Positions 13,549 to 56,569 of a stretch of DNA of 64,000 nt are shown here, in pieces. This DNA is from Trichoplax adhaerens (lineage: Eukaryota > Animalia > Placozoa), in assembly GCF_000150275.1 (NCBI RefSeq), contig NW_002060946.1, positions 2,189,454-2,253,453 on the forward strand. Reading direction: 5' to 3'. The notes below the pieces were generated by a model. The model was not told where the DNA came from and did not search any database. It saw only the letters and a list, made by a program, of their open reading frames with translations. How positions within the stretch are numbered: the stretch's first letter is position 1; every line of letters starts with the position of its first letter. Both the position numbers and the translations under genes were made by a program.

Positions 13549-16500
13549 TTACGGTGCACACCGCCAAGAATATAACTGTTGCGCCGGATTTTCCATATCT
13601 TGTTTAACGGAATTGACGGATACCCTTTTAATACATCCATGAAAACCTCGTACTACTTTTATAGATGCACTGACAGGAAGGAAGGTATAATCAAAAACGC
13701 CACCAATATAAGGTGCATAGTTGAAAAATTCATTAAATGTTAATGTTCGACCAAGATTTGCAGATTGAGTTCGTCCATTTACAGTTACCGTCAAGGTCTC
13801 CCGCGATACATTTGCCGTTGCTATGTAAAGTAGTAGTAAAATTTGATTTTAATTAACAAAATCGTAATTTTATTACACAAATAAGAATGATAATAAAGAT
13901 CCTTACCATGATACCAATTTTCAGGTTCTACATCAACGCTCGATTTCACCCGGAGGCTACCTTCCCGTTGTAGGAATAGTGCCTCTAACTTTTTTTCATG
14001 TAGATATAAAAGTAACGACGTTTGTTCTATGATCTCTTCGTAACCATTATTTAGAAAAAATATCAAGCCATCCTTTACTGTTGTTCCAGCAGGTTTAAAT
14101 CTCAAGCTTACAATGTATGTACTTTCAATGCGTTGTGGAGTGTGCCTAATCTTTACATATCCTTGACCACTACTATTAAAGGCCGCGGAGTAAGCGTCAT
14201 CTATTTGAGAATGAAAGAACAGTGATTTTCAGTCAATGAGAACCATTCGCCAACGTTTACATTAGATTAAAAAATTCTGTAAGCAACACTAACCCTTTGT
14301 AATAGTTTCGCTCCATTGACCATATACTGTTCCTACTGCGTTTGTTGCAGTAAGCCGTAAGATATAAGCTGTATTACTTTTAAGAGAGGTAAGGTGGTAG
14401 TTTTGAGAATCAAGCGGTATCGTTCGCTTGTAACAGACATTGCATGGTCCCGTTATCAAGGTATCCGAAGAGCTATTCCTTTCAGCGTATTCAACAACGT
14501 AAGTGATTAGTGCCTTATCATAGCCTCCAGTATAAGCAACTGGCTTCCATGTAACGTTAACAGTGAAAACGCCAGGATTAACTTCAAATGGTAACAGATT
14601 ACCAGGAAGACCTATTAAATGATTGATATAAGGTGTACAAGCATATTAATTAATAATAAAATATATAATCGGTAAAGCCATATCAAACTATTACCTTTGG
14701 TTGCCATATAAGTAAAATCGGAAAAACTCCTGCCAGCTTTATTTTCGGCAACAATTCTGACCATATATGTTGTATTTTGTCGTAAATTTGGAATAGAAAT
14801 TAATTCATTGTTTGAAGTCCTAATAAACTGACAACTTCTGCATACATTTCCCGCGCCAATATTGGTCCCTCTAACGTAAATTTGATACTCTACATAATAT
14901 GTTACATCATTTAGTGGGTACCCTCCATTTTTAGTTATAGGTCTCCATGACACTGTCGCTACCCTGACAGTAGTAATAAAATTTCGAATCTGAGGTCGTT
15001 CGGGCACTCCTTTTTGTATAGATGTAATATTATGGATGAGTAAGTTGCATGTCTACGCAGGTTTAGTCATAATTGCTATATCAGTGAAATAGAAGTATGC
15101 ATACATTTCATAATCCGATTACCTTTTGTTGTCATTAATTGCCATTCAGAGTAGCTTGATCCAGCTTTATTGATAGCAATTAAACGTACGCTATACGTTG
15201 TATTAGTATTTAGTCCCACTATCATATGTGAGTGATCAGCAGGGTTCACAGCACTTTGTAGGCAATCCCCACAAGCTACATTTTTTGGAAGACTTTTGCT
15301 ATCCCATTTCTGATATTCTAATCTATACTCTACTTCACGTAGCTTATAATTACCATTGAATGTAACAGGATTCCAGGAAATAGTCGCAGTATTAGGAGCA
15401 GTCACTATTTGACTTATGCTAGCTTTATCTGGTTTTCCTGATGACAAAAACAAACAGAAGTACAAATGTAATGCGTACTGAAGTATGTGGTGGAGTAAAT
15501 AGTAAATTAAAATTAAACTATAATACCTTTTGTCGCAAATGTTTGCCATTTACTATTTGATTCCCCTAATGGGTTTTCAGCTATAAAGCGATATCTATAA
15601 GTAGTATTCTCCTTTAAATTCTCAATTAAAACATTTCCTTTCAAATCAGGAAGTTTCACAATTTTGCAATTTTGGCCACAATTTTCTGGATCACTTGCTA
15701 ATGTCAATTGTAGATATAAGAAGTAGTCTCTGAAATCGTATCCTCCATTATGAGTGATATTTCCGTAAGATATCTTGGCGTTGTTATTCTCGATTATCAT
15801 TCCAGAGACTAGAGGTAAATCTGGATGACCTTCAATTTAGAATAATGTATAAATATTAATTTGATTTATCAACTGATGAAATGTTAAAGGCACACTAAAA
15901 TCGTTAGTACTTTTATGCTAAGCAATCATTAAATTAAATGTTATAAATAATGTAATTAGAATACTTATGAAAAGCCGTTTAGATACACTAATAAAAAAGT
16001 GCAAGCGCTACCTTTTGTTGTAAAATGTTGCCAGTCACCGTACAGAATTGATTCCTCATTATTGTTCAATATGACCAGAACTCGAAGCACATACTTAGTA
16101 TGGCCTTCCAACGATAAAATTACAACAGGAGATCTAGTCAAAGGAGCAGTAAGTTGACATGTTCCGCAAGTACCAGAACCAATGTTTGCATTGCGAAAGT
16201 TTTCTTCTGTAGTATACTGAATTAGTGTTTGTCTGTTTGAATCTGGACTGGCCGAATTTCCACTGTACTGCCACCAAATAGTAGCGGTTTTAGAGGTAGT
16301 TTCAATCGCCGATAACTTAACATTGGTATCTAAATAAGATTATTTAAATAAACGTTACTATACATACGGTAATACTGCTAATGGATTAAAAACGGCCAAT
16401 TAAAACGATATACCCTTTATGATGTTATTATGTTAGGTTAATTTAGCTTAAATATTATTGTGATTAGTACTTGTTGTTAGTTCACGAGTTACACGCTTCT

Positions 16501-19500
16501 TCTGGTTAGTTAAAATTAGTTTTTCGTTCCGGTAATTTGATGGCAATAATTTAGAATGTGAAGGTAAAATAATATCACAGTTGGGGCCACCCCAGCCTGG
16601 CATGCAATGGCAATCGCTGCCATATTTACAAAAACCGTGTTCTATTGTAGATTCAAGTGTGGTAGATTTGGTTGAAAGATTAGGTATTAGTTGTTATTTA
16701 TGTCAAGTTAGACACTGAGAGTTGGTTTGATATAATTGTAAAGATGAAGTATATTATGAATCGAACTGCTAAATAAAAAATATAAATATAATTTAACGCA
16801 TACCAGAACAGCCTGGGGATATTTTACATTCATTACATGACTCTCCTGTCCATCCGATATCGCAGCTGAGTAAAATAAATAGCGGATTATTACAATCGTA
16901 TTTGATAAAAGCCATAAATTTTAAAATTATTCCTCATTAACGGTAATGCTTTGATCATTCTATGTCTTACTTGCACTTGCTACGATTACCAAAGCAGTTT
17001 CCATGCGCTTCGTTGCACGAGACACCACATATAGCTAGTAGTAATTACACTTTATTTACTATATCATTATAATAATGCAACACAATTTATTGCAATCATC
17101 AAACTGGTGATATACTTACGAGTTTCACAGAAGAAGCCTGTATAGCCTGGATAGCAAGAACATGGATTTCGTTCGGTGATAGCACCATTTCCTAAAAAAT
17201 GATAGTAAAAATAGTATGCAGTGAATATAGAAGGATTTATGTAGTCACATATACAGATATCGAGAAGATCCAATTACATACTGCAATATCTTCCTTTATC
17301 AAGTCGATCGCACAGAATACCAGCCCATCCGCTTTGACATCTATATCATCATGGTTAAATAAATTTATAAAATTTAATGCTACTACTGTTCGAATCACTA
17401 CAGATTAATAGTTAGTCTTTGGCCTTGTATGCTTTTATGTACGATATTAAGATATTTGTAACGTACCTGCACTCGTAAGGTTGGCTGCAAGTACCTTGCT
17501 TGCATCCGGTTCGACAAACAGCTGAATAGTAACGATATTAAATAAATAATTATGAATCTACATAAACTGAATAGATTACGAATCAACATTCATAAATTTA
17601 AAAAATGATAAACAGACCAGTTAACAGTGTTAAAAGCAAGATAGTAAATCGCAGTGATGCATTTTGCTATATAAAGCAATGATATCGAATGTACATAATT
17701 TGCCCAATTTTTTTGTAACATTTACGATCTTTTATATTAGTTAATTGTAATAAAATTTTGAATTGAGTTCCAGCCATTCTGTGTAAGCAATAATACTAAT
17801 TTGTTATATTTTAATGTACAAATAAGAGAATGTATGCAAATACTAGCTAAATGCGCCTTCTGTTTTTCTAATAAAGTTATTACTTCTGATTTACGCCGTT
17901 GGCGCCTTAAAGAACTACAATAAGAGTACAATATAAAAAATATTACGTTGAGGAATACTCAAGCAAAGAAAGTAGCGCACTGTAAATTTCACAAGTATAA
18001 TAACGCAAAGCATTGAATGTAGAAATTTTTAAAGATAGCTGAGGTTAACAATGAATAAATTATTAATTAGTTGTTTATTTTTTATCTATAGGAGGCTATT
18101 GTACCTTGATCGCATCGACTGCCCCGATAACCCAGTACACATCTATTCTCGATCGTGAGTCGCAAGCTAGCAAACAGGCCCCGTCCGGTTAGATCATACC
18201 TTTTGCCGCCTTCAATTCTAATAAATCGATACATGCGGATCAATGATGCTGTATTTAAGCGTTCGGCGTAGACACTTAGTTGGAAGAAGTAATCCTAGCC
18301 AAGAAATAACTCGAAGTTAATGTTGTCGTCTAGTATTGCATAGGTCACAAAAACGCTGCGAGATTTTTACCAGATAATTTATGCTTTCTTTACGAAATTA
18401 CCAGGTCGTTAATCGATAAAAGTACACATACTATACTATTGCTAACAGATTCTGTATTCCTTTGCATAATTATAATTATCATATTGAAGTGTAAAGGATC
18501 ATCAAATGCACATGTATTTGCACCAATTAGGTTGGCAAAAGGAATACTACAACATTGCATAAAACAATGTGGAATTCTACATACAGCACTATGCATTCAT
18601 GCTGAATGATATATAAGCCATTCACATTACGTACTACGCTTATAAATTGCGAATAACTCCTATATTTATCTGTATATTCGTATACCATTCAATAAGTTAA
18701 TTTTTCAATTCTTAAATGGTAAACAGGCCGATATTCATAGCAACTAATATATTACTAAGATATAATTTTAGATCATCACAGATTTATATTTATCTTAAAA
18801 TATAAGTTCTATTTATGACAATATGATCAATAACAGGGAGCACTAATTTTTCGGCCTGTAATAAAGCTTTAGTAAACTATTCTATTCTACATTTATTTCT
18901 TGTCGTTAATATACAATATACCGTAGTCTTTGCTAGATACTGTAAATGTTATTACTATCTAGGCGCAGAGCTAATCTTGTCGACTGAGAAAAGTAAGCGA
19001 ATTTTAATAAAAACTGAATTTCATTTTTTTTCTACGCTATTCAAACTGCTTCAATAGTTAATCTGACACCGAAGTATCGCACATAGTATACTACATTCAG
19101 GGCACACGTACTGCCAATGCCCGACATTATTTGCAGCCGCAAGTAAAAATTCTTTATAATCTAAATGTATAGCTTCTTGGATTATGTATAACAATGTACA
19201 GCAATTTGGCATTGTTTCGAGTAAAAAGAAATGAGTATCACGCTGTCATCAGTACTATACAGTATAAATCACAGGAGTGCGGAACTGTGAGTTATTATCT
19301 AATTTCCACAGTTTTATAAAATAGCTAATTAATTTAATTCATCTTACCGATTTAGTATCGACATTTTGTAATTTCATAATCGGCTGGTCCGGTGAAAAAT
19401 TAATTTCTTCACCTCCGGCGATAGGTTTTCGGACTCTTGTACCAGCAACACATGAAAAGTCGTATAATTGTGTACTTAAGCACACATCAAATATGTAAGT

Positions 19501-20163
19501 GCAATTTCCTTTGGGTTGACATGTTCGTTGAAGGGCAATAACTTGATTCGGATTAGAAAATTTTACAAAATTAACCACTAATTCCATTCGGCTCTGCGCG
19601 GAGACATGCTAAAATCCATCGGGAACAAAAGGGAGGAAAATAATCTTTAGAAAGTCATCTTTGATGATAAATTTCAATCTATTAATGGTTAGACAAAATT
19701 AATGCCGGCACATATATAAAAAAAAGCTTAAATTCATTATATGCCAGCAGACTTTACGGCGGTTTAAATAAATGAAATTTTAAGAGTAAATTTAAAAGGT
19801 GATGCAATCGGGAACAAAGGGAACATGATTTTCAAAAATAGAACGACGATATAGACAATAGACGTTCACACAGAATAAAAAAATTTCGATGGGTTATATA
19901 ATTTCCGTTAATGTAATAACGTTTGCCTTTCTGTTATTGAATTAGATATGAAATCTTTAATAATGCGGTTATTAAATCTCATGTTAACAAAAACTATTAA
20001 TGAATGATTGTATCGATCTTTCATTTAACTTAATTATCGTCGATTGACGTAGACATTGGATCTTGTATTGTACGTAGAAATAGCATTCAAAGTTATTATT
20101 TCAAATTACCTTAACTGGCAAGCTTAATATCAGAGTAGACAATAGGAGGATAAGGAACTTCAT
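13549..20163 (-). CDS. Cluster gene A: secreted Delta-like-head protein (SP - MNNL/C2 - reduced DSL - 4 EGF - 5 FN3 - laminin G)
   Basis: Exons (approx.): 20163-20110 (MKFLILLLSTLILSLPVK); 19608-19348 and 18295-18105 (C2, ending CVLGYRGSRCDQ); EGF exons 17521-17467, 17340-17283, 17191-17121, 17034-16971, 16865-16804, 16641-16471; FN3 exons 16329-16012, 15830-15527, 15439-15123, ~15009-14694, 14611-14294; LamG 14200-13907 and 13820-13549 (GLIFF..WYH..TVNG..YIGG..GFHGCIKRVSVN..C). GT-AG, phase-consistent; no TM helix. Confidence 0.85.
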
Positions 20164-20857
20164 TGTTTGATTACTATCTCAGTCTTGGAATCCAATATGA
20201 AAGTTTATCAGTCGATTCTAGATGATATTCTAGGTTACCTAGCAATAAAACGCAATCAGTTTCAGACAATGGCCAATTTATATAATAGTTTTTAAGGACC
20301 GCAGCTTAAGGATGAAATGATGTTTTTCTTTTAAGCGCTGTCACCTTTTTGATTTCTTGATCTGTAAATAATATCGTTACGATACTGTACTATATACAGT
20401 TATTTTAAGCAACAAAGTCAATAACCTCTAAATTTTTGTTTACATAGTATTTGATCACTGTTGTACTCTACGGTAGTTATTCCGTCATTTATAGTTGTGG
20501 CGTCATAAACGTACGCACAACTCGTAACATGAAATTGATTACTAATAGAAAATTTATGGATTTCTGATAGGTCACAGTACTCGATGTTATCTTATAATTA
20601 ATTCTTAGTATAAACAGTGGTTGAGTTGGAAATCCTTGCGTTTAGCGTATAGAAAGAGTACTATAAGGAAAATATGATACGATAATGTCTATTCTGGTAC
20701 AAGGTCTAATCAGTCAATCGGCGCGAAGGAACTAAACGTATCAGCGGGCGTGTAACAAGTTTCATGAAGTCAAATGTCCCTCAAAATTTAAAAGTCATAA
20801 GTCACTTGATATCAGCAAATCAGCTGGATAGAGTGTCATCATGATCTGCCACCATAC

Positions 20858-20892
20858 GTACTGTACACTGTACAGTACAGTACAGTACAGTA
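20858..20892. repeat. (CAGTA)n / GTAC-type pentanucleotide microsatellite
   Basis: GTACTGTACACTGTACAGTACAGTACAGTACAGTA; similar tracts at 23325-23360, 23650-23718, 35080-35096, 35198-35235 and 36008-36030. Confidence 0.9.
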
Positions 20893-38593: not shown

Positions 38594-39500
38594 ACAGATG
38601 CATAGAATAAATTCGGTGATGGTCCAATTGCTTCTACCAGAGTTACGACATACAACGTTATTACTACATCACGAGCTACTGCCTTATTAGCGACTGCTTC
38701 ATCGCGAGTTACTACTCATCCACAAGTTACTTCGTCACGAGTTACTCCACCATAACGAATTTCGGACGGTCTTATTGGAGCTATTGGGGGAGTAATTGAA
38801 AGAAGTCTTGTACAGATAGTGATAATCTTTATATTTCTACAGTTCGGTAGAAAGCAAGGTATGAAATACTTTTATAAGATATAAATTATATGCGGATACT
38901 GCCATATTTATTGATTACAGTAATAATTTGTCATTTTCTATGATTAAATACAAATATTATTCGACAAAGAAGATATAAAAATGTAATGGTATTTGAATAT
39001 CTATTCCTTGAATTATTAACGTAACATATTATTTCAAAATTTAAATGTTTATTACGGTAGATCTTCAATATCTGAACATGATAGTATAATTCATATTCTA
39101 ACGTGCTATTGTGTGAAATAAATTCACATACTCGTCATTTTAATCACAACCCTGACAGATTATTGTTCATTTAAATTATTCAGCTACAGATCGACAAACA
39201 TACGGGGTAGTTCTGCCAGTATGCATTTCCGGAATGGTGCAGTAATGTGGAAATCGGTAGTATAAATAACCGTTAAGAAAATTATAGGAAAGTACTGGAG
39301 TATATTATACGGTTGATCGAGATTCTAGCACTCTGCTTGACGGATTCCATCACTGGTACTGTATACTATGGATTAGAGTTTAACTTATAGTAAACACAGT
39401 TGATGATACTGTAGTAACTCTGTGGATCTTTAGAAGTGCGTTTAGGTAGTTATGAATGATTAGAACCTTGGAGTTCTGGTGAGTTATAACGAAGCACAGT
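38594..39500 (+). pseudogene. Pseudogene remnant of a fourth cluster paralogue (mucin + TM + tail exons, gene-B-like)
   Basis: Reads DGPIASTRVTT...RVTPP*RISDGLIGAIGGVIERSLVQIVIIFIFLQFGRKQ|GTATGA, homologous to the gene B TM exon, with an in-frame TAA at ~38753. The following intron resembles 33040-33170, and 36925-37330 resembles gene B upstream DNA 25330-25720. Confidence 0.75.
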
Positions 39501-44039: not shown

Positions 44040-47000
44040 TGGCTGACAGCTGGTAGTATTGCAGCAATATTAATAATCTTAATCTCAATGTGTACTGTAA
44101 GCATGAATTATCCGGAAAAATCTTGAGGTATTCTTTATATAATTATGTGCCAAACCGCGTGAGACGGTATTAGAAATCAAAATCAAGTACTGTAGTTGAA
44201 ATAAAAGGATGTATCCTACCTTTCCAACTATATTAAGTTTTTTTATGCACATAGTACGGTAACTATTCTGCTAACTACGATAATTACTAAATTTTCAACG
44301 TTGCTCTTGGTCATCAATCAAATCATGCACGTAAAATTACTATGAATGCGTTATAGTTATAATTTTAAGCGATAAGGTGATACATACGAGTTACTTGTGA
44401 ATTAATTTAAGAACATTTACAACATATATATTAGTAGACGATGATTAGTTACTGACTAAAGTAAGCCATACATATACTTTACTATTCGCTTTGATCTTTC
44501 AGGTAAATTGCCAATATTCTACTCGTGCCAGACTGATGTTAGAACTGGTCCAATATTATAATCCTAATGAAAGACTTTATGATGGAAGGAAATGCGATGT
44601 ATTTTCCGCGTGCGATTACGTTTTTGAGATAGCAATTGGCACATCTGGTCGAAATAATAGTTATTACTCCCTCGTAACCAATACCTTTGAAAATGGCCAA
44701 TACATTCAGTTCTCATCAGGAACAGCGCTGGCATCCAATGTTGGAAATCCAATTAGGGTTCCTATTCTTACGGCATTACCGGTAGGCTATGAAAATATCA
44801 GGATATTTGATTTCAAGTACTGTAATTATGCATAACCGATACACAAAAGTGTCATTTGTTTTTGTTAATAATCTGTTACATTGCTATAAAATTTTAGCCT
44901 TATTACCAAGTTAGTACCATCATCATTGATTGGGTATTGCTTAAAATTTGGTAGTTGATGATACAGTACTTCTCGTCAAGACAGGTATACCGCTATTACA
45001 AATTACTTTTTAACCGTGCAGTGCAGTATTTTACTACATTACCAAATGTATGGTAGTAGTGGTTTATTATTAGTTCAAATATTATAACGATAGCATACTA
45101 CAGTACGTGTAGCTCCTGGTCTGCTAACGATAAACAATTATAAAGAACACTAATTTATAGCATGCTCGGATTGATTACCATCACATAATTTATTCGAATC
45201 ATTCATTATATTTAAGACAGCAACAGTGTAATGATTTTATATCTTAAATGAATTTACTATCTTATTCCAAAGGCATCCGAATCGATACAATTATCTATCA
45301 TCGTCAAAGACAACGAATTCAATTCGAAATTTGAAATTGTGGATTTTTTACGCTACTATAGCGACGCACTATCCGGAACCTCATTAAATAATCTAGTTAT
45401 TACTGGTACACGAACTAAAGTCAATCCATCCAAATTAACAGTCAACTTTAAGATAGAATGTGGGACTGGCTGGGAAGGCCCCAAATGCGATAGAGGTACA
45501 TCGACCGTATAGTATTAAAATTATCTTAGCAGTACTATAATTTGACAGTAGCAAAACTTCATTTTAAAATAGTCCAATAAAACTTTTGAATAAACTTAGT
45601 TAAATACTACCAATGTTACTTGTCCTAATGTTAAGATTGAAATATTTGTACGTAATTATTTTTAATCTTTATAAAATAGTGCAACAAAATTTTTGAATAA
45701 ACTCAGTCAAATACTACCAATATGTACTTGTCCTAATGTTAAAACTGAAATATTTGTATGTAATTATTTCAAATCTTTATAAAGCTATCTGCCGCTCAGG
45801 CTGTAGCGTTACGCGTGGTTCATGTAACAATAGTCCATTTACCTGCAGGTAAGTTTTAAAGCCTATAGCACTATCAAATTGGTATTCTTGTTGACTATTT
45901 TCTTTGTAAAGGATAAGATCTAATAGAATTGTACTTTTGCTCAGTTTCACTTTTGTTGCTGTACATATATTGTATGAATAAATATCATTAAGCCGTTCTC
46001 ATCATAAAATATGAATAGTTGCAATCCTGGCTGGACTGGATCAACATGTGATTCTTGTATAAAGTTATCAGGCTGTGGTAAATCATATAGCTAAGATCAT
46101 TTTTATTTTTTTCAATGAATATTTAATGCAGGCTTCTTAGAGATTATGTAATCTTTCATCTACATTAGTGCTTTTATTGGACACATTGACGTGGATGTGT
46201 AATTTGTAGTAGTAAGAATTAATTTATTTTAATGAACTTCAATTGCATGTTGTTTTTTAGTACATGGCTATTGCCGCCTTGGAAATGATTGTACCTGCAG
46301 CACTGGTTGGCAGGGATCGTACTGCAATATAGGTGCGTAAATAGTTGCTGGCGTTGAGTTATATTATAAAGTTTATGAATGATGTTGTCCATAAAAATAC
46401 TATTAGAGCCTATAGTGGTTTGAGTCTTTTCAACGAATTGGATGTATTACAGCTAAAACTCTAGTTTATCGAATTAATAATTTGCATATGTTATATGATG
46501 CTCTTTAACGGTAATCATTGTTGCTATTTTCAAGCGATATGTTCCGGTGGATGTAATGCTGAACATGGACGGTGTGCCTCGCCAGATAAATGTTTGTAAG
46601 TTGAAATTGATGTGTGATAAAGTAGTTATAGCAATTTGTAAACTGCTACAAATTTAGTTACGCTCTCTCTCATATGATCGTAAGTATACTTTTTCTCTCT
46701 GTTACGTTCGGTAATGATTAGCACTCCATAGCTTAACTGAAGCATAACTTATGCTGATATTTGTTTTCAACTCGAAATAGATGTGACTCTGGATGGACTG
46801 GTACAAGCTGTGATACTTGTATTAAATCGCCACACTGTTCAGGTATGAACTAACTAGTATCGCCACCTTTATACCCTATTTACTCTTAATATCGTAAGAC
46901 ATGTCAATAACGACGGCATGGTATATACTGTACTTGTTCATCCTAACTTTGATTAAATTCTTGAAGCCTGTCTTTGTTTTCTATGTGTAAAATAAAAATG

Positions 47001-50000
47001 TCTGCTTGAATTAGAATTACATGGTTATTGTCTCAATGGAAACGATTGTCTCTGCCATGATGGTTGGGGTGGTCCAAATTGTGATAAAGGTACGGATTTA
47101 GAAGCTTTGGCTTCGCGTTATTAAATTTGCGATATAATAATTACAGCTTATAATGCTTATAAAATTGATTTTGTTACGTAAAATAACATTTAAATCCTTT
47201 ATCGCAATTAACTCAATAAGTACTCGTATTTCGACATGGGATCTCTTAATTGGTTACCTTTATCAATTTGTTTTCTTTACTTATTAACGATTGTATTAAA
47301 ATTTTATTAACATTATGCGATTTTGAATTAGCCGAATAGCTTATCGCCCGTATTTTATTCTAATTTTATCATTTAATTACTGTATGTTTAGACTTAAATC
47401 CATGTAGTAACCCTAATCGTTGTAAAAATGGTGGTACATGCCAGCGTTTAGGAATAAATACCTATAGGTGCAACTGTCTACCAAGATATACTGGAGGTCA
47501 CTGTGAATATTGTACGTTAGTCATTTAAATTATATGGCTTTTAATATTTTGTTGTCAATGCTACTTTGGTAATTATCTTGAGCAAAACTTCTATGTCAGC
47601 ATATATTTACAAACTATTTGTTTGCTGTTTTCGACAATATGTTTAGCGCCACCTGATAAGCCTCAGGTACGAAATATTGCCATCAATGCTACACAAATAG
47701 CGATAACATGGGATAAATTCCAATCAAACGGTGGCTACCCTTTAGTTAAACTATACTTTCGATTAGACTATTATCAAGTTAGCAGCTTCGGCAGCCCCGT
47801 TTTCGGCACTAGATCTTCATCTAGCAACATCTCTTATGAAATTAACGAGGCCACCATTTCTCACCTACTGCCCGTAACCTATTATAGTGTTAGCGTTATC
47901 GCTTTTAATGGAATTGGTAAGAATAGCAGTTCGTGGAGGAGAGTAAAAACTATAGGTTATCCTCCACACCCTCCGATCATTAATAGAATAGTTACAACAA
48001 TGAATGCTATCGATATTGAATGGAACATTACATCAACTGGGGGTTATGATATTTCGGAGGTTCAGAGTTTCCTTGAATATCAAAAATGGTCAGATTATTT
48101 TGAAAATCGAGAAAAGGGTTTGACTAAGATACTTCTTCATCATTATCAATATCGAATTGACAAATTGCAATCAAATACTGGCTATAGATTGCGTATTACC
48201 GTAAAAAATCCTATTGCTAAGCGTTCTTCTATATGGATCAACGAAACCACTTATGGTATGGCTAGTTAAGCTTTGTACTTTATTGCTTATATTTCGTGAC
48301 ATAATTACCAGTACAATGTATCACAAGTTTGCTGCGCAAGCAGTTTTTAAGTAAATAGCGGAAGAGTTCCAATTTCACTATGGTGTTCTCTCTGAATTTC
48401 ACATTTTAAAGAATCTATTTAATTTAATTTATTTTACAGGTGTCCCTGGTCTTCCAATTATTTCTAGTTTAATTAGTACCTCCACGACTATAATTGTTCG
48501 TTGGTTACCATCTCCCTCAAATGGTGGTTATACCATGTCGAACTTATCATACAATGTAGAATACTTGCAGGCTGATGGCTATCAAGAACGTATTTGTCCA
48601 AGATGTACAGTTTCGCCATCAGTTAATAACGTTTACTTTCTATTAAATAAACTAACGATTGGAAGTCCCTATGTAATAAGAATTAAGGCAACTAATCCAG
48701 GAGGAGAAAGTTATAGCAGTTGGAGAAGAATGTCTACAAAAGGTGTGTAAGTAGTCTTGCGTTATGGGCTTGATATTTTTAAGTACAAGAATGGGCAACT
48801 AAAAAATGAGAAATCTCCTTTATCAGGTGGTCCCTGGTACATAGTGTATAGAAGTACTTCGTAAAACAACTGATTTATTTAAAAAAGTAACGGTTTAACA
48901 AAATTCAGATTCCTGTTATAGAATCCTTGAGACGTTTTATCACGCTAACATTATACTTACGGTATAACCTGCTAATTACTTTATCTAGCTTTTGTGTATA
49001 TAAAGTTGACGTAGTATTAGAACATTGTCATTGTAAATTTTTATGTAATAAGTCCTTATGCTCTATAAATATTCTTATCTAAACTTTCACTCCCTGTACA
49101 TATTTGTATCGAATACTACGGTATCATCATGGTTTGATTCATGTTTGATTGGGTTTTATCTTTAGGATATCCGCGTAACGTAAAAATTGATCAAGTCTTA
49201 CGTAATTCTACATCACTAAATATCACATGGTTTCCAGTCGTTGATAATGGCGGTTACAGTTCTTCCAGTCTCATATATTTTATTGAATACATCAACAAAT
49301 CCAGTCCTTTCAGTAATAGCCAATCTAATTGCGATGCTTGTAAAAGGACAAACAATGTTACTACAACTTTTGTAGTAGTATATAGATTGACAGTATTGAC
49401 AGAGTATTATGTTCGGTTACATGCAATTAATCCAACAGGAGACTCAAAATCGTCGTGGCAAAGTACGACAACTTTAGGTCAGTTCTTTAATCTAGATCAC
49501 ATATAATATCTTTACAGATTTTCACGCTATTTCTTCTACTCGTGTAACAGGTATGCGGATAGCTAAATATTACTACTTTCAAATAATAGTCGTATCTCAT
49601 TGCAATAGCCAAAGCTTAAAGCAATGTAATCAATAGGAATTGTCGTTATTTAATACAACAGTATTAGTATTAAGATTATCTATCTATTTTGGCTTTAGTC
49701 GTTAAATGCTTTGCAAGTTTATTCAGAAAAGTGTCTGGATTCTATCCTTTTAGCAATTTCTTGACAGGAACTCTAACATCAGGCTATTATTTGTATAGTA
49801 TCAGTAATTTAATTTATTAGTATGTCTAAACGTTGTATTACATGAGTTAAATGTGTAAATCGTTGGTAATTCATGAACTCTCCTATGAGTTTATCAAGCT
49901 GATGTCGTTTATTTTTCTAATAGAAAAAGTATTCAAACATAAAGTACTAAATACTTGCTAAATTATGCCTTTTCGCTACTAACAGCTTGCTTTTGTAAAA

Positions 50001-52808
50001 TTTGGTTACAGGATACCCTCCTGATGCTCCAACAGGTATTACAATTGTAGCCGATGCGCAAAGAGCCACGATCACATATAAAAGAATCAAATATTACGGT
50101 GGTTATAGTTTAGGAAGCATTACGTTTTATGCCAGATATCTCATCAATAACGGACAAGTGCCTAATACTGATTGTACGAACTGCTATAAGAGGACTTATG
50201 GTACAGAATCTTCGATTCAATTAACTGGTTTATTGGTTGGTACAGTTTATTACATTCAAGTTGTTGCAGCTAATGAAGCAGGGCAAAATGCCAGTCATTG
50301 GGAAAGATTCACAACGAAAGGTTATCTTTGAAATTGTATAATCGTATAACGATGTATATGTGCTTTACAGATCTAATTTTGAATCTAATATTATGCATTG
50401 ATAAATTCTTATGTACTTCTGTTTACAGGTAAACCAAGTTCAGTTACTGGCATTAGAATTACTGTTTTACCCTCGGGGGTTATAATTACATGGGATCATC
50501 CAGCGTATACCGGAGGTTACGATCATTCACAAATCACTTACTTTGTTGAATACGGTGTTGCTGGTACAGGCAGTGATGGGTGCCAAAGTTGTACGACTAT
50601 CCCTACAAATAGAAATACCACTGTGACTTTACGCGGTTTAGGGAGCTCAAGAGAATATCGAATACGCGTCATAGCAAATAGTCCAGCAGGCGTTTCAGCT
50701 AGTAACTGGACATCAGTGTGGACAAGAGGTATCAAAAATTGTTATACGAATGTTTTTAGCCACGCATTCGTAATTATTAGGTTGTTCATAAACTTGCATT
50801 GCTTTGTTATGTACCCTATGACTGTTACTTATTGCTTTTAAATCATGACGCTCAATACGATATTTTTTCTTATAATGAGGCATTACACATCGTACGTTAT
50901 GCATTATAATTTCTATTTATGATTCTGTGTATGCGTTTATGAAATATATTTTGTTCATATTTTGCTTATCACGACACCATTGTTAGCATTATACTTGCAT
51001 GCACGTAATGGTTTAATACTGATTGTTAATAAATCAATACTGTCATTTCTATCATTATATGATATGTAATGACGTCGAGGTGTTCTTCTCATTTCAAATC
51101 GGATAGATATATGTTTTGGACTAACAGATTCTTTATTACTTATTGATTGTTCCAATGGCTAATAACATTGACTAATTTTCTACTGAACGTTAATAGGTGT
51201 TCCTTCCGCTCCATCAGACATATTAATTGGAAATATTACCTCAACTTCGGTTTTAATTAGTTGGACTGCTGCTAAAAGCTACAATGATCAGAACTCAACT
51301 GATGTTGCTTACCGTGTCAAATATTCCATTCATCGTATGCGTGACATTAACTGTAGCTTTTGTCGCCTTACTTCTCCAACTTGGCGTACATTTATAGTAC
51401 TAACAGGATTAGAATCTTACACTGCTTACGATATTTCTGTTGTTGCTTCCAATAATCTTGGCAGTAAATCTTCTACTTGGTTTCGATTTGTTACTTTAGG
51501 TACGCGAAAAGTATACTAGATCATACTGCAGTTGATCATAATAATTGCTCGCTGTTTTGAATTAATGAAGAATTGTTATACCTCTTTAAATCATTTTCGC
51601 AGGTCAACAACCACAAATGCCACAAATTATTAATACAGAGGCAACATCGTCCTCAATAACAGTTAGATGGAAGTTACAAGACTACAATGGAGGGTATGAC
51701 ATGAAACAACTATCGTATTATTTGCAGTATCTGGCGGGAGAGGAGTTACGTGAAAATTCAACCTGTCATGCATGTCATAATACTTCAATCACGCAAGCAA
51801 ATCATATTCAAATCGCTGGTCTGTCACAAAACACCCGGTATAATATTAGGGTTGTGGCTGTTAATCCCGCAGGGACAAGTGTTAGCAAGTGGATGAAAGT
51901 TTCTACTACAGGTGTGTTTGTATGAAATGGTATGTGAATAATGCGCTAACATAGCTAATTTATATAAATATTAGAGTGATTTTATTATGGGTTGATGAGA
52001 TGCTTTCAGCAGTGCATAATAACAGTTAGTCTTGTTTATAATTTGTGCTGTAATATTATAGGCCTTCCAGAAAGACCCACAATTGTCAGTACTACAGCTA
52101 TCGATTCGTCTTTGATTATTCAATGGAATAAATTATCTTATAACGGTGGTTATCCTGTTGAAAATGTAATTTTTTACGTGCAATACAGCACCAAGGAGCA
52201 ACAGAGCAACAGTAGTCATTGTCAATTATGCCTACTAACTCAGCCAGTTAGGAATATCAATGTTACTGTAGGTGGTTTGAATCATTTAACGTTATATTGG
52301 ATTCGCGTTCTAGCTGAAAACGTAGTCGGTAGAAGTTATAGCCGTTGGCATCAAGCATGGACATTAGGTACTGTGTTACTATGATCGAATCCCTATTTCT
52401 AGAATGCAATTATTTTGTGTTACTTAATAGATTTCAGGCGAAGTTAATCAAACATGAAGTTACGTTGATTTTCTTATTAATCATTAGGTTATCCTCCTGG
52501 CTTAACTTCAATCACTTCTTCTTCCTCTACTCCTTACTCAATTTTTTTGACTTGGAGAGAAATCACTGATAACGGATTATATAGCATAAATGAATTAGTT
52601 CTTTACGTTCAATATGTCACAAAAGACTTTAAGACTCAAGATTGTAGATATTGTCATCGTGTAAATACTACTTCAGCAACTTCAGTCGTCATTCCGAATT
52701 TAATATCTAATACTATTTATAAAGCTAGAGTTATTGCTCAAAATACCGCTGGAAGTACTAAATCAGCATGGAAAGATATAGCGACAAAAAGTAAAGCAAC
52801 TTACATTC

Positions 52809-52843
<35 letters not shown>

Positions 52844-55800
52844 TATACACGTATGTAACAGAATTCGATACGTATAAACTTACGAATTGTTATTTTTGGG
52901 GAATTACTTTAGATTCCATACACTCTGGCATAGAATTCAATGTGATCAAGGTTACATCTGAAACAGCCACTATAAAGTGGACTGTAGAAAATCCAACAAA
53001 CCGTCACCCTCACACTTTTACGATAGAATATGTACAATCTAATATTCCTGTCTCTGGCTTAATTTGTTTACACTGTCACAAAGTAGTGAATCTCACTATC
53101 ACTCAGTATCAGCTGGTTAATTTATCGATAAATACGATTTATAAGTGGCGAATTAAGGTTTACAGCCTTCAGGAAACCAATATTACAGACTGGAAACAAT
53201 TTAAAACTACAGGTATATCTACAGTAATTTCCCTTCTTCTGAAATTAGTATGATATTAGTAAATAGTTAGATTCATACATTAGCTTAAATGTCTATAGTG
53301 TAGTGTACCTTTATTGAATCTCTATGGTATGCAAGAGAATTATCAAATTTGATTATTACAATTTTGTGATAATAGCAGATATTGTTTGAAGTTTTTTCTC
53401 CGCTTAATATCGACATTATATTTATTAATTCATTAAAGCATTTAGTCATTAAATTTTATGAGTTTTGAGAAGCATTTACTAAAGATAGTAACTCGTCATT
53501 CTAAATGTTTTCATTAAATTGAAAGGTCCTCCTGATAAGCCACATATTATCGCTGCAACTACCAACAGTTCGACAGCTGCAATTACCTGGACTTCCATTG
53601 ATTATAATGGTGGTTATGATAGAAGTCTTTTAGTCTATTATGCTCAATATACGAATAGGGAGTTACACGATGATGATTGCTTGCAATGCATGCGGTCTAG
53701 AAATATTACGGTAACGACTGCTGCAATTAAGAATTTAAATAGTAATTCAAATTACTGGGTGAGGATTATCTCGCATAATCCAACCGGCAAAAGTTACGGG
53801 AACTGGATGAAAATCAAGACTAAAGGTAGGTCATGAGATTGTCAATGTTAGGCTTAGGGTTATGTCTACATTTTCTATAGCTGTTACTTAATCACTCTCA
53901 ATTTCACCCTAGTCTTATTAAAAAAGTTAATTATAAATTTGCTGTCAAATTATCGCAATGGAATCTGTGGATAGACGCAATAAATTTATTAGTTTGCATT
54001 GTAAAAGGAAGTTTTCAACATAAGAAAAATATGAAAATATAATAAGACTGTATAAACACTTATACGGCTTTTGTAATTATACCGTATCATTTAACATTGA
54101 CGATGTCACATGTGTGAACAATACTTCTGAAAATCTTGTTAACTAATAGTTACGATCATGAGAGTCCATGATTTTAATTAAATTATAATTAGTCTCATGT
54201 ATGTAAATCTTTGTAGGATTACCTGATAAGCCGAAAATAACTAGTATCGTAAATAGCAACATCACGACAATTCTAGTCGATTGGGATCCCATTCGGTATA
54301 ACGGTGGCTACGACTTATCATTAGTAGTATACTATGTCATATTTGGTCCAAGTGTAATGGACGGTGGCATCCCAAGTCCATGTGAAAAGTGTAATCGAAG
54401 TTTGAGAACGTCCGGGAGTATGGCCATGTTAACATCGTTTATACCGCATACTTATTATAGTTTTAGAGTTGTGGCGAACAATGTAGTTGGCAGTAGTAGT
54501 AGTCCATGGGAGTATTTTAAGACTAGAGGTAAGTGAGTTTGATAGTCAGCAATGTCTCTAGAACATATGTCAAGTATTAAATTTAAAAAATATATTTTTA
54601 CTCATTACTATTGCGTTCGTACAGTACTAAAAGAGCAATACGTGTATTAAACATTTCCATTTCTTGTTTAGGTCTAGCTCCAAATCTCTTGAATATTAGT
54701 AGAATCATAGTAACAACTAATTCGATAGCTATATTTTGGCAATTACTATTCTCTGGTGGCTATCCTATAGAAGATATAGAATTTTTTATTCAGTATATCG
54801 AAGGACAGTGTCAGGAATCCTTTAATTGTACATTGTGTCAATTTATTAAGTCTGAAAATTGGTCATCCTTTACTATTAATCAGTTACCCTCAAACACCAA
54901 TTTTTGTTTCCGAGTAGCAGCATCAAACGAAATTGGAACATGCTACAGCCAGTGGATAAGCAGGCGGACTTTAGGTATGAAAAATTTATAAATGTACGAA
55001 TTGTTAGTAATATTTATTACCGCAAATTGTTAACGATATATTTCAACGTAAAAACGGAGAACGCTCGCCTACTATAACTCTAAAATTGAAAAAATGTTCT
55101 TGTTTATGCTCACGAATGAAATAATAGAGCCTACAGTATCAACAACAAAAATATCGGAAACTACGAGTATAATCACTCAAAGTCAACCGACCCTTGGAAG
55201 TACCGCGCCAGCTACGTCACTGGCAACTACTAAGTATTCAATCTTTCCACCTATACCTCATGTTACAGCAGTTGAGGGAGGTTGGAATTATATAAATATT
55301 TCCTGGATATCGCTAAAGAGAACAATTGATCCATCCACTTTTTATTTTATACGTTATAAAGAGCAAGTTGACGAGAATATGACTTGCTACGATTGCCTTG
55401 AAACATCGGCAATTTATCAACATCACTACTTGCTAAAAAATCTGCGGAATGATACAATTTACTTAATTCAGGTGGTAGCTAAGAATATGAATGGAAAAAG
55501 TTTTAGCGCTATAGTTCAAGTAAAAACAAAGGGTAATTTATATATGTCGAAACTTTAATGTATCTACTTTACTTGTTATAAAAACTTTAATAGATTAATC
55601 ATATTGGATTCTTAAACGCATATGATAATAATGGCTCTATACTTTAAACGAAGGCGATTTAAGCTTGTAATAATAATGCTGCTTTTTTTTCATTAGAATA
55701 TCTCTTTCAGGTGAAGTTTACTGTAGTTATGACTGTAGAAAATTTATATCTTATCTTTTTTAGACATCATTTTATTATCAGCCTACAATTGTTAGACATA

Positions 55801-56569
55801 TAGTACTTTTATAGGTCTAGAAATACACGCTAAATTACAATTTCTTAACACGGTACTCCTGATTAACTATTTTACTAAAATATTAAACTAAATCAATCCT
55901 ACAGCACCACCGCAATCAATCCCGGCCGTACGTACATGGCTTGGACCGATATTAGGTGGAGGAGGAGCAGCAATCGTTCTTATGATAGTAGCTGTAATTT
56001 TTTCTATTAAGATTATAAGAAAGCGAGGTATGAGTGATTTCGTTTCTTCTAACTTTGATTGCACAATTAACTATCGTAAATTTTTCAATCAGACTAATTA
56101 AAGGCTAATCCAGGATAAATTAAATTAATATACATATTGATATTCACTTAACATTTGAATATAAAATTTTATCTATTAAGGGGCATTATTATCTGGCAAC
56201 CAAAAGAATAAGCAACGGCAGCAGGATTCAATCTATGAAGAAATTGACAATTTTACTAATGTTTTATACGAAAGTGGATCAACACTTGGCTTAAAAATAA
56301 AGAATGATACAGGTACAGATTTACCTACAAATATCACTCCCGATAGTCCATTCAGACGCCAAGCAAGTAGTATCAATTCAACAACGACGTTGCTTACAGA
56401 TAGTGGAATATTTCATTGTGGGGATGATCAAAACAAACCGAAACCAGCGTTTAATCATACACCTGGAGTTCCGCAGTTACAACGATCACTGTCTGATGAT
56501 GAATGTTATAGTTACATGTATAGACAGCGTAGTAGAGCTAATACTGCAGAAGATTCATCTTTATTATAA
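44040..56569 (+). CDS. Cluster gene C: type I membrane Delta-like-head receptor (SP - MNNL/C2 - reduced DSL - 5 EGF - 15 FN3 - TM - ~135-aa signalling tail); start codon not located
   Basis: Exons (approx.): 44040-44096 (WLTAGSIAAILIILISMCT); 44503-44781; 45273-45495; EGF 45785-45848, 46019-46077, 46261-46332, 46536-46595, 46781-46842, 47014-47088, 47391-47511; FN3 47647-48256 (two domains) and exons starting ~48440, 49166, 50012, 50428, 51196, 51603, 52041, 52488, 52913, 53525, 54217, 54672, 55129; TM 55906-56027 (WLGPILGGGGAAIVLMIVAVIFSI); tail 56181-56569 ending DSSLL*. Confidence 0.87.
45566..45782. repeat. Intronic tandem duplication, ~108 bp x2
   Basis: AAAATAGT..TTTTGAATAAACT.AGT.AAATACTACCAAT..TACTTGTCCTAATGTTAA..TGAAATATTTGTA.GTAATTATTT..AATCTTTATAAA occurs twice in tandem. 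Confidence 0.9.
52811..52840. repeat. (TA)n microsatellite in a gene C intron
   Basis: Directly visible TATATA run. Confidence 0.95.

What the first reader, a model, noticed from the sequence alone, without database searches (positions are those of the whole stretch)
13549..56569. Cluster of chimeric Delta-head / FN3-body cell-surface proteins: one secreted, two membrane-bound, one pseudogene
Seen: three genes share the same N-terminal module and intron positions (signal exon, two C2 exons, split EGF exons) but have very different C-termini: LamG/secreted; mucin + short tail; 15 FN3 + long tail. A decayed fourth copy lies between B and C. Known: MNNL/C2 followed by DOS-type EGFs is the Notch-ligand head, and canonical Delta/Serrate/Jagged proteins lack FN3 and LamG domains. 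Inference: a lineage-specific family in which a Notch-ligand head was re-deployed on variable-length stalks. It could be a soluble-plus-membrane recognition or adhesion system under birth-and-death evolution, organised like invertebrate allorecognition/immune receptor clusters. I do not know a described family with this architecture, but could not search.
Basis: partly seen in the sequence, partly recalled or inferred. Interest (0 to 1): 0.9.

Follow-up and report, generated by a model that had tools for sequence, protein, structure and literature searches.

The report
Delta-headed FN3 surface proteins in Trichoplax
The simple marine animal Trichoplax has a small family of cell-surface and secreted proteins that carry the tip of the Notch ligand Delta, without its main Notch-gripping part, on long fibronectin or mucin stalks; this design is not described in the papers and databases I could search.

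Summary
The window is Trichoplax adhaerens (gene B = TRIADDRAFT_55383).

**Observation.** The three genes are real.
- A (- strand, 13549-20163): head, EGFs, 5 FN3, LamG, stop. No membrane anchor.
- B (+, 26360-33293): head, 5 EGF, mucin, 1 FN3, TM, short tail.
- C (+, 42208-56569): head, 5 EGF, 15 FN3, TM, tail of about 150 aa.

Spliced transcript contigs from three studies join C's signal exon, both head exons, all EGF exons and the first FN3 exons. Head and FN3 body are therefore one mRNA.

**The head.** It is a divergent Notch-ligand C2 (MNNL) domain. Paralogous exons pass Pfam MNNL, and family profiles hit DLL4. Fold and language-model searches return only Delta/Jagged heads at the top. 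The DSL domain is reduced to one C-x8-C loop, so these are not canonical DSL ligands.

**Not confirmed.** I found no decayed head, EGF or FN3 copy between B and C, only a weak mucin/TM-like relic. An intact fourth member (D) lies 62 kb beyond the window. At least 10 further DSL-less MNNL genes lie elsewhere. Allorecognition-type variability is not supported.

**Function.** Unknown. It is most likely a long-reach contact or adhesion receptor, or a Notch modulator.

The scan holds three sub-notes on this same window and none on other DNA.

The parts
13549..20163 (-). Gene A, whole span (secreted member): signal, C2 head, EGFs, 5 FN3, LamG
   Evidence: Open exon series on the - strand; domain calls below. 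The transcript was not checked.
20110..20163 (-). Gene A candidate signal-peptide exon (MKFLILLLSTLILSLP.., GT donor)
   Evidence: Scan for ATG, a hydrophobic run and a donor. Inferred only.
19342..19608 (-). Gene A head exon 1 (first half of the C2/MNNL-like domain; keeps both Cys pairs)
   Evidence: A profile built without it scores E=6e-11, 39 bits; alignment A1.
18085..18294 (-). Gene A head exon 2 (second half of C2 plus one C-x8-C loop)
   Evidence: h2 profile E=0.001 on its C-terminal part; pattern seen.
16451..17528 (-). Gene A EGF exons
   Evidence: tblastn to B/C EGF exons; Pfam EGF_Teneurin 28 bits, above the 24.3 cut-off.
14292..16330 (-). Gene A five FN3 domains, one per exon
   Evidence: Local FN3 HMM E 2e-11 to 5e-27; Pfam fn3 33.3 and 27.1 bits.
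13549..14228 (-). Gene A LamG domain (two exons) and stop codon; no TM follows
   Evidence: Pfam Laminin_G_2 23.4 bits, above the 22.9 cut-off, on the last exon; ORF ends at 13552.
26360..33293 (+). Gene B, whole span (= TRIADDRAFT_55383; H2 orthologue RDD43841.1, 722 aa)
   Evidence: mapping of P0008 onto the window.
26360..26419 (+). Gene B signal-peptide exon
   Evidence: P0008 residues 1-20 map here at 100% identity.
27808..28083 (+). Gene B head exon 1
   Evidence: h1 profile E=1.4e-30; paralogue-only profile E=1.9e-16.
28213..28446 (+). Gene B head exon 2 plus C-x8-C loop
   Evidence: 46% identical to C's; h2 profile E=1.9e-32.
29602..31583 (+). Gene B EGF exons: two Delta EGF1/EGF2-like pairs plus one hEGF
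   Evidence: P0008 sequence and mapping; sub-threshold Pfam EGF_DL_JAG and JAG1-like_EGF2.
31712..32415 (+). Gene B Ser/Thr-rich mucin stalk
   Evidence: P0008 residues ~355-550.
32416..32736 (+).
   Evidence: Local HMM E=1.6e-18; Pfam fn3 31.0 bits.
32909..33293 (+). Gene B TM exon (32909-33037) and short Tyr-containing tail exon (33207-33293)
   Evidence: P0008 mapping; sequence.
38600..38880 (+). Possible relic of a stalk/TM exon: S/T-rich run, then a TM-like segment with a stop and charged residues
   Evidence: tblastn with the B TM exon gives E=0.04 or 4e-4 without composition correction. No other family domain is nearby.
42208..56569 (+). Gene C, whole span (H2 orthologue modelled as 2144 aa)
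   Evidence: RNA joints; H2 gene call with EGF_TEN and fn3.
42208..42273 (+). Gene C signal-peptide exon (MVGKLWNLVLLMLIAGHLSINQ, GTAAGT donor)
   Evidence: The loose end of the transcript contigs maps here.
44503..44781 (+). Gene C head exon 1
   Evidence: RNA joints; paralogue-only profile E=1.2e-24.
45273..45495 (+). Gene C head exon 2 plus C-x8-C loop
   Evidence: RNA joints; h2 profile E=8.6e-33.
45785..47511 (+). Gene C seven EGF exons: 45785-45848, 46019-46077, 46261-46332, 46535-46595, 46781-46842, 47015-47089, 47392-47511
   Evidence: GT..AG joints in three runs; Pfam EGF 30.6 bits on the last one.
47647..55540 (+). Gene C fifteen FN3 domains
   Evidence: Local HMM, 15 hits. The first four are joined to the head by RNA. 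Pfam fn3 39.8 and 34.1 bits.
55892..56098 (+). Gene C TM exon
   Evidence: Hydrophobic run followed by RKRG.
56180..56569 (+). Gene C cytoplasmic tail exon and stop (IYEEI and other Tyr motifs; ends SSLL)
   Evidence: ORF; no Pfam hit.

Best explanation
**Shown.**
- This is a placozoan family of type I membrane proteins (B, C, and D outside the window) plus one secreted form (A).
- The membrane-distal tip descends from the Notch ligand Delta. It has a C2 (MNNL) beta-sandwich, a DSL domain collapsed to one disulfide loop, and Delta EGF1/EGF2-type repeats (two pairs in B and C) ending in one classical hEGF.
- This head is spliced onto bodies of different lengths. These are 15 FN3 plus a long tail with Tyr motifs (C), a mucin stalk plus 1 FN3 (B), 5 FN3 (D), or 5 FN3 plus LamG with no anchor (A).
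- The family belongs to a larger, undescribed set of DSL-less MNNL genes in Trichoplax, which also has a single canonical Delta.

**Inferred.**
- The head is the binding end. It would contact a partner on an apposed surface: membrane lipid, as Notch-ligand C2 domains do, and/or an EGF-repeat protein such as Notch.
- The stalks set the reach. From generic domain sizes, C would extend several tens of nanometres.
- C would relay contact through phosphotyrosine motifs. A would act as a soluble bridge or competitor, tied to matrix by its LamG domain.
- My odds on the partner are about 45% Notch-independent contact or adhesion receptors, about 30% non-canonical Notch modulators and about 25% something else.
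For: **Organism and gene models**
- P0003 = TRIADDRAFT_55383, on a contig of the same length as the window's.
- The H2 orthologue P0008 (722 aa) gives B's full architecture.
- H2 models C as 2144 aa with EGF_TEN and fn3.

**One mRNA**
- Contigs of runs X5, X6 and X10 (three studies) carry 12 GT..AG joints from head exon 1 to the fourth FN3 exon.
- Their 5' loose end maps to the signal exon.
- One contig is 7214 nt long, which fits the whole gene.

**Head = MNNL/C2**
- Paralogous exons pass Pfam MNNL: 28.8, 31.7 and 22.8 bits against a 22.5 cut-off.
- A profile of those paralogues alone scores C at 1e-24, B at 2e-16 and A at 6e-10.
- A family profile without canonical Delta has DLL4 (4xl1) as top PDB hit at E=0.003. 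With the Trichoplax Delta exon added it reaches 1e-9.
- For the AF2 model of P0008, the 11 best Foldseek PDB hits are all DLL/Jagged N-termini (E down to 1e-5).
- VIA gives DLL4 C2 Z 9.0, rmsd 3.4 A over 121-124 residues, against about 7 for generic C2 domains.
- ESM Atlas feature scores are 0.91-0.93, and structural TM is 0.65-0.74 over 161-177 residues. All listed structural rows are Delta-like clusters.
- The intron after 'WP/LP' is shared with the canonical Delta exon.

**DSL loss**
- Pfam DSL scores only 12.3 bits against a 24.2 cut-off.
- The genome holds a single strong DSL (71 bits), 6 kb downstream of the one strong MNNL match (105 bits).

**Family**
- At least 15 h1-like loci exist.
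- Gene D has a head, 5 FN3 and a TM, 62 kb downstream.
Against: - Pfam MNNL does not hit the A, B, C or D head exons directly.
- The AF2 model is confident only for residues ~25-125 and has mean pLDDT 39. The margin of Notch-ligand C2 over generic C2 domains is about 2 Z units.
- B and C have lost one of the two conserved MNNL disulfides.
- Transcripts of A and D were not examined.
- Nothing here tests binding, location or signalling, so the functional half is inference from domain biology.
- The Notch-contacting core of DSL is absent, which weakens any Notch-ligand role without excluding it.
Confidence: 0.72

Rival explanations
1. They are non-canonical Notch ligands or modulators. The C2 plus EGF1/2-type head would still engage Notch, in cis or in trans, and tune the single Delta-Notch pair of placozoans. 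This is how DSL-degenerate DLL3 or DSL-less DLK/DNER-type proteins act in vertebrates. A would be a soluble antagonist.
For: - The head is homologous to Delta/Jagged.
- The EGFs resemble Delta EGF1/2, with sub-threshold PF21700 and PF21795 hits and similarity to the canonical Trichoplax Delta EGFs.
- Notch signalling is active in placozoans and only one Delta has been studied (PMC10580291).
Against: - The central part of DSL, which in solved complexes contacts Notch EGF11, is missing.
- B and C lost an MNNL disulfide.
- FN3, mucin and LamG bodies and a Tyr-motif tail are foreign to Notch ligands.
Confidence: 0.3
2. It is an allorecognition or immune-type recognition cluster. Membrane and soluble receptors would be polymorphic and evolve by birth and death.
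For: - Four paralogues with different stalks lie within ~130 kb.
- One family pseudogene lies elsewhere, at C1414:6230738.
- All 3 amino-acid differences between the two ~2% divergent copies of B fall in head exon 2.
Against: - Head exons diverge less than introns between those copies: 1.0% against 2.6%.
- H1 and H2 heads are 100% identical.
- Transcript contigs of other strains show only about 0.5% exonic differences.
- Paralogues are old (21-46% identity), and B-like and C-like lineages have separate relatives elsewhere.
- No pseudogene was found in the cluster.
Confidence: 0.06
3. They are teneurin/tenascin-type matrix proteins, as the H2 annotation 'Teneurin-a' implies. The N-terminal beta-sandwich would be unrelated to Delta and only look similar.
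For: - Pfam EGF_TEN and EGF_Teneurin partial hits.
- EGF followed by an FN3 array is the tenascin layout.
Against: - EGF_TEN scores 31.9 bits against a 65 cut-off.
- The proteins are type I with an N-terminal signal peptide, whereas teneurins are type II.
- I saw no YD, NHL or fibrinogen exon.
- Four independent methods tie the head to Notch-ligand C2, and the intron position is shared with Delta.
Confidence: 0.03
4. It is a gene-model artefact: the head exons and the FN3 exons belong to separate neighbouring genes.
For: The old JGI model of gene B is partial and skips exons. A and D have no transcript evidence here.
Against: - Spliced contigs from three studies join head, EGF and FN3 exons of C.
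- The H2 models of B (722 aa) and C (2144 aa) contain both parts.
Confidence: 0.02

Closest known systems
Canonical DSL Notch ligands (Delta/DLL1/DLL4, Serrate/Jagged), including the single Trichoplax Delta at C1403:1208815-1215107
   Same: - N-terminal C2/MNNL domain.
- An intron after the WP/LP motif.
- EGF1/EGF2-type repeats follow the head.
- Signal peptide and type I membrane topology in B, C and D.
   Different: - DSL is reduced to a single C-x8-C loop.
- The body is FN3, mucin or LamG instead of a long EGF array.
- One member is secreted.
- B and C lack one MNNL disulfide.
- The tail carries Tyr motifs.
Divergent or non-canonical Notch ligands (vertebrate DLL3 with degenerate DSL; DLK1/2 and DNER without MNNL/DSL). 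From general knowledge, not tested here.
   Same: Delta-related EGF proteins that lack a working DSL. They are known to modulate rather than classically activate Notch.
   Different: - None has FN3, mucin or LamG bodies.
- DLK and DNER lack the C2 head that is kept here.
- There is no orthology; the family here is placozoan.
Other DSL-less MNNL genes of Trichoplax (clusters at C1409:1.83-1.90 Mb and 4.27-4.38 Mb)
   Same: - The same two-exon head ending in one C-x8-C loop.
- Some of these heads pass Pfam MNNL.
   Different: They are followed by many classical hEGF repeats. No FN3 of this subtype was found in the parts I could fetch.
Tenascins and teneurins (source of the 'Teneurin-a' label on the H2 orthologue)
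   Same: Tenascin/teneurin-type EGF repeats followed, as in tenascins, by an FN3 array.
   Different: - No teneurin type II topology and no YD shell.
- No tenascin fibrinogen globe.
- The N-terminus is a Delta C2 head.
Invertebrate allorecognition clusters (Hydractinia Alr, Botryllus FuHC, sponge aggregation factors). Analogy only, from general knowledge.
   Same: Clustered paralogous surface proteins, with membrane and soluble forms.
   Different: - Different domains.
- No evidence here of high polymorphism or rapid turnover.

Membership tests
DSL-family Notch ligands (Delta/Serrate/Jagged) | N-terminal MNNL/C2 domain | tested here: met
   - Pfam gives no direct hit on A, B or C.
- A profile of paralogues that pass Pfam MNNL scores C at 1e-24, B at 2e-16 and A at 6e-10.
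- The family profile's top PDB hit is DLL4.
- Foldseek and VIA top hits are all DLL/Jagged C2.
- ESM Atlas structural TM is 0.65-0.74 to Delta-like clusters.
DSL-family Notch ligands (Delta/Serrate/Jagged) | DSL domain (six Cys, Pfam PF01414) | tested here: not met
   - Pfam DSL scores 12.3 bits, E=0.22, against a 24.2 cut-off, on 14 residues only.
- Only one C-x8-C loop lies between the C2 domain and the first EGF.
- The genome's only strong DSL is in the canonical Delta.
DSL-family Notch ligands (Delta/Serrate/Jagged) | Delta/Jagged-type EGF1-EGF2 (DOS-type) after the head | tested here: inconclusive
   - PF21700 EGF_DL_JAG scores 19.0 and 17.0 bits, and PF21795 18.5 bits, all below the 27 cut-off.
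- By eye the Cys and GW spacing matches the canonical Trichoplax Delta EGFs.
DSL-family Notch ligands (Delta/Serrate/Jagged) | Type I transmembrane protein | tested here: met
   - B, C and D have a signal peptide and one hydrophobic segment followed by basic residues.
- A does not: it ends in LamG.
DSL-family Notch ligands (Delta/Serrate/Jagged) | Binds and activates Notch | not testable with these tools
No complex was predicted.
Teneurin | Type II topology with an N-terminal intracellular domain, a full EGF_TEN block and an NHL/YD/Tox-GHH ectodomain | tested here: not met
   - An N-terminal signal peptide and a C-terminal TM are present.
- EGF_TEN scores 31.9 bits against a 65 cut-off.
- All remaining exons are FN3, mucin or LamG.
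Tenascin | EGF array, FN3 array and a C-terminal fibrinogen globe; secreted oligomer | tested here: not met
   EGF and FN3 arrays are present. The C-termini are TM plus tail (B, C, D) or LamG (A), not fibrinogen.
fn3 (PF00041) | Pfam fn3 above the gathering score | tested here: met
   - C: 39.8 and 34.1 bits.
- A: 33.3 and 27.1 bits.
- B: 31.0 bits.
- D: 25.2 bits, against a cut-off of 25.
- A local HMM finds 21 FN3 domains in the window.
Laminin G (PF02210) | Pfam Laminin_G_2 above the gathering score | tested here: met
   Gene A's last exon scores 23.4 bits against a 22.9 cut-off and covers the second half of the profile. The preceding exon gives a weak Laminin_G_3 hit.

The most novel reading that the evidence does not exclude
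Placozoans turned the Delta head into a general-purpose extracellular binding module. About 15 DSL-less MNNL genes would use it. One branch (A-D) forms a graded-reach contact-sensing system: a soluble form, short and long tethers, and a long form coupled to tyrosine-kinase signalling. This system would work independently of Notch, for example in recognising neighbouring cells, prey or symbionts. If so, the C2 head had, or gained, a function of its own apart from DSL-mediated Notch activation.
Probability: 0.25. Interest if true: 0.8.

Novelty: new variant of a known kind. Interest (0 to 1): 0.6.

Why it matters
- The literature I could search treats Trichoplax as having few Delta genes. It counts ligands by their DSL domain (PMC2770060, PMC12166595, PMC10580291).
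- Databases label these proteins only as 'FN3 domain-containing' or, wrongly, 'Teneurin-a'.
- Recognising that a dozen or more genes carry a DSL-less Delta head changes the inventory of Notch-ligand relatives in an early-branching animal. Four of those genes carry the head on FN3, mucin or LamG bodies.
- It gives a natural experiment on what the ligand C2 domain does without DSL.
- It names concrete candidates for cell-contact or Notch-modulating receptors in an animal whose cell-cell recognition molecules are largely unknown.

Tried and rejected
- **Pfam MNNL on the A, B, C and D head exons:** no hit. Homology had to be shown through paralogues, profiles and folds.
- **Decayed copy between B and C:** tblastn and blastn with all exons, plus h1, h2, FN3 and EGF profiles against 33.3-41.9 kb alone, gave nothing better than E~0.06. 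The only signal is the weak TM-like relic.
- **phmmer of C's head exon against 1.84 billion representatives:** 7 hits. Six are unnamed short metagenome or Logan fragments of 92-155 aa, so their taxon is unknown.
- **The search for homologous proteins:** the B head and a 7-row alignment (saturated at 8000 candidates) returned only the two B models. No database model of A, C or D could be obtained as a protein id.
- **The look-up of encoding contigs for P0003:** returned no record. The tool notes that records of the window's own genome may be left out.
- **The fetch from genomes:** The parts of the minus-strand C1409 paralogues nearest their heads were not inspected, so the absence of FN3 there rests and on partial loci.
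- **AF2 of P0008:** only the first half of the head is confident. A richer alignment (A5) put the second-exon fragments under the first exon, so I did not use it.
- **Joined spliced model:** none was built from window exons or sent to any search. All searches used single exons by reference or the database proteins P0003 and P0008.
- **Complex prediction:** not run, because I do not claim a binding pair.


Full report
**Source and gene content.** The window has 33% G+C and short introns. Earlier notes of the scan name the genome Trichoplax adhaerens. I confirmed this. Gene B's exons are identical to P0003, which NCBI names TRIADDRAFT_55383 [Trichoplax adhaerens]. P0003 sits on an 8,164,392-bp contig, the length of the window's own contig C1411.

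Stop-free stretches in six frames and Pfam on single exons show three multi-exon genes.
- Gene A is on the - strand at 13549-20163.
- Gene B is on the + strand at 26360-33293.
- Gene C is on the + strand at 42208-56569.

**Method limit.** Every search used a single exon by reference, or the database proteins P0003 and P0008.

**Gene C is one transcript.** Of the public runs holding this stretch, several hold about 0.33-0.43 of its words, which is what spliced RNA would give. I laid four of them on 44150-50100. Contigs from three runs of three studies (X5, X6, X10) carry the same 12 GT..AG joints.
- The joints link head exon 1 (44503-44781) to head exon 2 (45273-45495).
- They continue through seven EGF exons (45785-47511).
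- They end in the FN3 exons 47647-48255, 48440-48742, 49166-49477 and 50012 onward.

The contigs' 5' loose end maps uniquely to 42240-42269. An ATG at 42208 opens a 22-codon signal peptide there, and it ends at a GTAAGT donor. So the gene starts 2.2 kb upstream of the first head exon.

One X10 contig is 7214 nt long. That fits the whole gene, and the Trichoplax sp. H2 annotation models the orthologue as 2144 aa with EGF_TEN and fn3.

**Gene B.** The H2 protein P0008 (RDD43841.1, 722 aa, labelled 'Teneurin-a') has a head 100% identical to the window's. Its sequence runs as follows:
- a signal peptide;
- a head of about 155 aa;
- one C-x8-C loop;
- four EGFs that form two Delta EGF1/EGF2-like pairs, then one classical hEGF;
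- a Ser/Thr-rich mucin stretch of about 200 aa;
- a TM and a 30-aa tail with Tyr motifs.

Those of its exons that BLAST reported at 85% identity or more map to 26360-33290.

**Gene A.** On the - strand I find:
- a candidate signal exon at 20110-20163 (inferred);
- head exons at 19342-19608 and 18085-18294;
- EGF exons, with EGF_Teneurin at 28 bits;
- five FN3;
- a two-exon LamG domain, with Laminin_G_2 at 23.4 bits against a 22.9 cut-off, followed at once by a stop.

No TM follows, and the next gene is an unrelated hydrolase. A is therefore most likely secreted. Its transcript was not checked.

**FN3 count.** A local HMM built from eight gene C exons finds 21 FN3 domains in the window: 5 in A, 1 in B and 15 in C. 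It finds none elsewhere.

**The head is a Notch-ligand C2 (MNNL) domain.** Pfam MNNL does not hit the A, B or C exons directly. Five independent lines nevertheless support homology.
1. *Paralogues pass Pfam.* Searching the whole genome with C's head exons finds at least 15 paralogous exon pairs. Several of these pass Pfam MNNL above its 22.5-bit cut-off, at 28.8, 31.7 and 22.8 bits. A profile made only from those paralogues scores C at 1.2e-24, B at 1.9e-16 and A at 6.4e-10. The next best of the window's 1961 six-frame fragments scores E~0.1.
2. *PDB by sequence.* A family profile without any canonical Delta has the DLL4 N-terminus (4xl1, 4xlw) as its top PDB sequence hit, in register, at E=0.003. 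Adding the canonical Trichoplax Delta exon raises this to 1e-9 and brings in fly Delta and Jagged-1.
3. *Predicted fold.* An AF2 model of P0008 is poor overall (mean pLDDT 39) and confident only for residues ~25-125. Even so, its 11 best Foldseek matches in the PDB are all DLL1, DLL4, JAG1 or JAG2 N-terminal fragments (E down to 1e-5), and generic C2 domains come next. VIA-align gives DLL4 C2 Z 9.0 with rmsd 3.4 A over 121-124 residues. Fly Delta scores 8.6, Jagged 8.2 and synaptotagmin C2 about 7.
4. *ESM Atlas.* The Atlas holds P0008. For residues 21-215 the three nearest clusters by language-model features are MNNL+DSL Delta-like clusters (0.93, 0.92, 0.91). All ten structural neighbours are Delta-like proteins (TM by query 0.65-0.74, 161-177 residues aligned).
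5. *Shared intron.* The intron between the two head exons falls right after the 'WP/LP' motif, as in the canonical Trichoplax Delta gene.

A and D keep both conserved MNNL Cys pairs. B, C and their closest relatives have lost the second pair.

**The head is incomplete as a Notch-ligand head.**
- Between the last C2 strand and the first EGF there is only one C-x8-C loop of the form C..GW.G..C.
- Pfam DSL scores 12.3 bits against a 24.2 cut-off, over 14 residues.
- The loop aligns equally well with the first or the last loop of the canonical Delta DSL, so an internal deletion is plausible.
- Genome-wide, there is one strong MNNL match (104.8 bits) with one strong DSL match (71.2 bits) 6 kb downstream at C1403. 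This is the canonical Delta.
- The literature counts Trichoplax Notch ligands through DSL. It reports few Delta copies (PMC2770060), places one Delta ligand in its tree (PMC12166595), or follows one Delta gene, expressed in peptidergic progenitors (PMC10580291).
- I found no paper that mentions DSL-less MNNL genes or an MNNL-FN3 architecture in placozoans.

**Wider family.**
- The FN3 subtype of these genes occurs almost only in A, B and C and at one more locus on the same contig, C1411:2318918-2320765.
- That locus is gene D, in L037. It has head exons, at least one EGF, five FN3 and a TM, with no stops. It lies 62 kb beyond the window's end.
- The other MNNL-like paralogues form two clusters on contig C1409. 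In the parts I could fetch, the same two-exon head is followed by classical hEGF repeats and no FN3 of this subtype.
- One h1-like piece elsewhere carries three stops.

**The claimed pseudogene.** Between B and C (33.3-41.9 kb), tblastn and blastn with every exon and four family profiles find nothing better than E~0.06, even against that interval alone. H2 has no gene call there. The only trace is an S/T-rich run followed by a TM-like segment with a stop and charged residues at about 38600-38880. It matches B's TM exon at E=0.04, or 4e-4 without composition correction. It may be a relic of a stalk/TM exon. It is not a decayed copy of the family's head or body.

**Distribution and variability.**
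- phmmer with C's head exon against 1.84 billion representative proteins gives only seven hits. One is TRIADDRAFT_55383. Six are unnamed fragments of 92-155 aa, and for those checked the contigs are about 0.6-2.2 kb metagenome or Logan contigs.
- One fragment is 62% identical to C and 41% to B. Another is 48% identical to B and 40-42% to C. The B/C duplication therefore predates the split from those presumably placozoan sources.
- Contig C1267 is a second, ~2% divergent copy of B's 5' half. Its head exons differ at 5 of 492 bp (3 non-synonymous) and its introns at 23 of 895 bp.
- H1 and H2 heads are identical.
- This is ordinary purifying selection on small numbers. It does not show the hypervariability or rapid turnover expected of an allorecognition cluster.

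**How it most likely works.** What is shown is a Delta-derived C2-EGF head, a stalk of variable length, and either a TM with a tail or a LamG end, in one mRNA. The rest is inferred from what is known of the domains.
- Notch-ligand C2 domains bind membrane lipids as well as Notch.
- FN3 and mucin segments are spacers. With generic domain sizes, C would reach several tens of nanometres.
- LamG domains bind matrix or glycans.
- YEEI-type motifs are Src-family SH2 docking sites.

My best reading is a set of long-reach contact or adhesion receptors (B, C, D) with a soluble relative (A). The main rival is non-canonical Notch modulators. No step of binding or signalling was tested.

**Verdict.** The finding is real and more than chance. 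The pseudogene and the allorecognition analogy do not. I class it as a new variant of a known kind, a Notch-ligand relative with a new architecture.

Noticed in passing
L037 (G000:C1411:2314000-2323999), 62 kb beyond the window end: Fourth intact family member, 'D': head exons at 801-1100 and 1856-2101, an EGF at 3333-3509, five FN3 at 3889-6772 and a TM at 6965-7261.
   Followed up: partly
G000:C1409:1.83-1.90 Mb and 4.27-4.38 Mb (L012-L020, L022, L023, L027, L033, L038): About ten more genes have the same two-exon MNNL-like head and single C-x8-C loop, followed by classical EGF repeats. This is a DSL-less Delta-like expansion that I did not find in the literature.
   Followed up: partly
window 47647-55540, 14292-16330, 32416-32736; L037 3889-6772: Nearly every FN3 of genes A-D carries a CxxC pair mid-domain and an NGGY-type motif. 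The scan also noted this separately (s1-748264).
   Followed up: no
window 56180-56566: Gene C's tail contains IYEEI (the preferred Src-family SH2 motif) and further Tyr motifs, and it ends in SSLL. B's short tail has YDQVYEF.
   Followed up: no
G000:C1267 (L002, L011): A small contig carries a second copy of gene B's 5' half at 97.6-98.9% identity, probably the other haplotype. The three amino-acid differences all fall in head exon 2.
   Followed up: partly
window 20421-20591 (-): A weak h1-like fragment (E~0.1) lies just upstream of gene A's candidate signal exon. It is probably chance.
   Followed up: no
window 11639-12442 (+) and about 6516-7102 (+): There is an intact single-exon alpha/beta-hydrolase ORF, with a similar but interrupted copy 5 kb upstream.
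   Followed up: no
window 60053-63998 (-): Exons of a class C (GABA-B/metabotropic-like) GPCR run off the window's end.
   Followed up: no
G000:C1414:6230738-6230923: An h1-like piece with three in-frame stops: a pseudogene fragment of the wider family.
   Followed up: no
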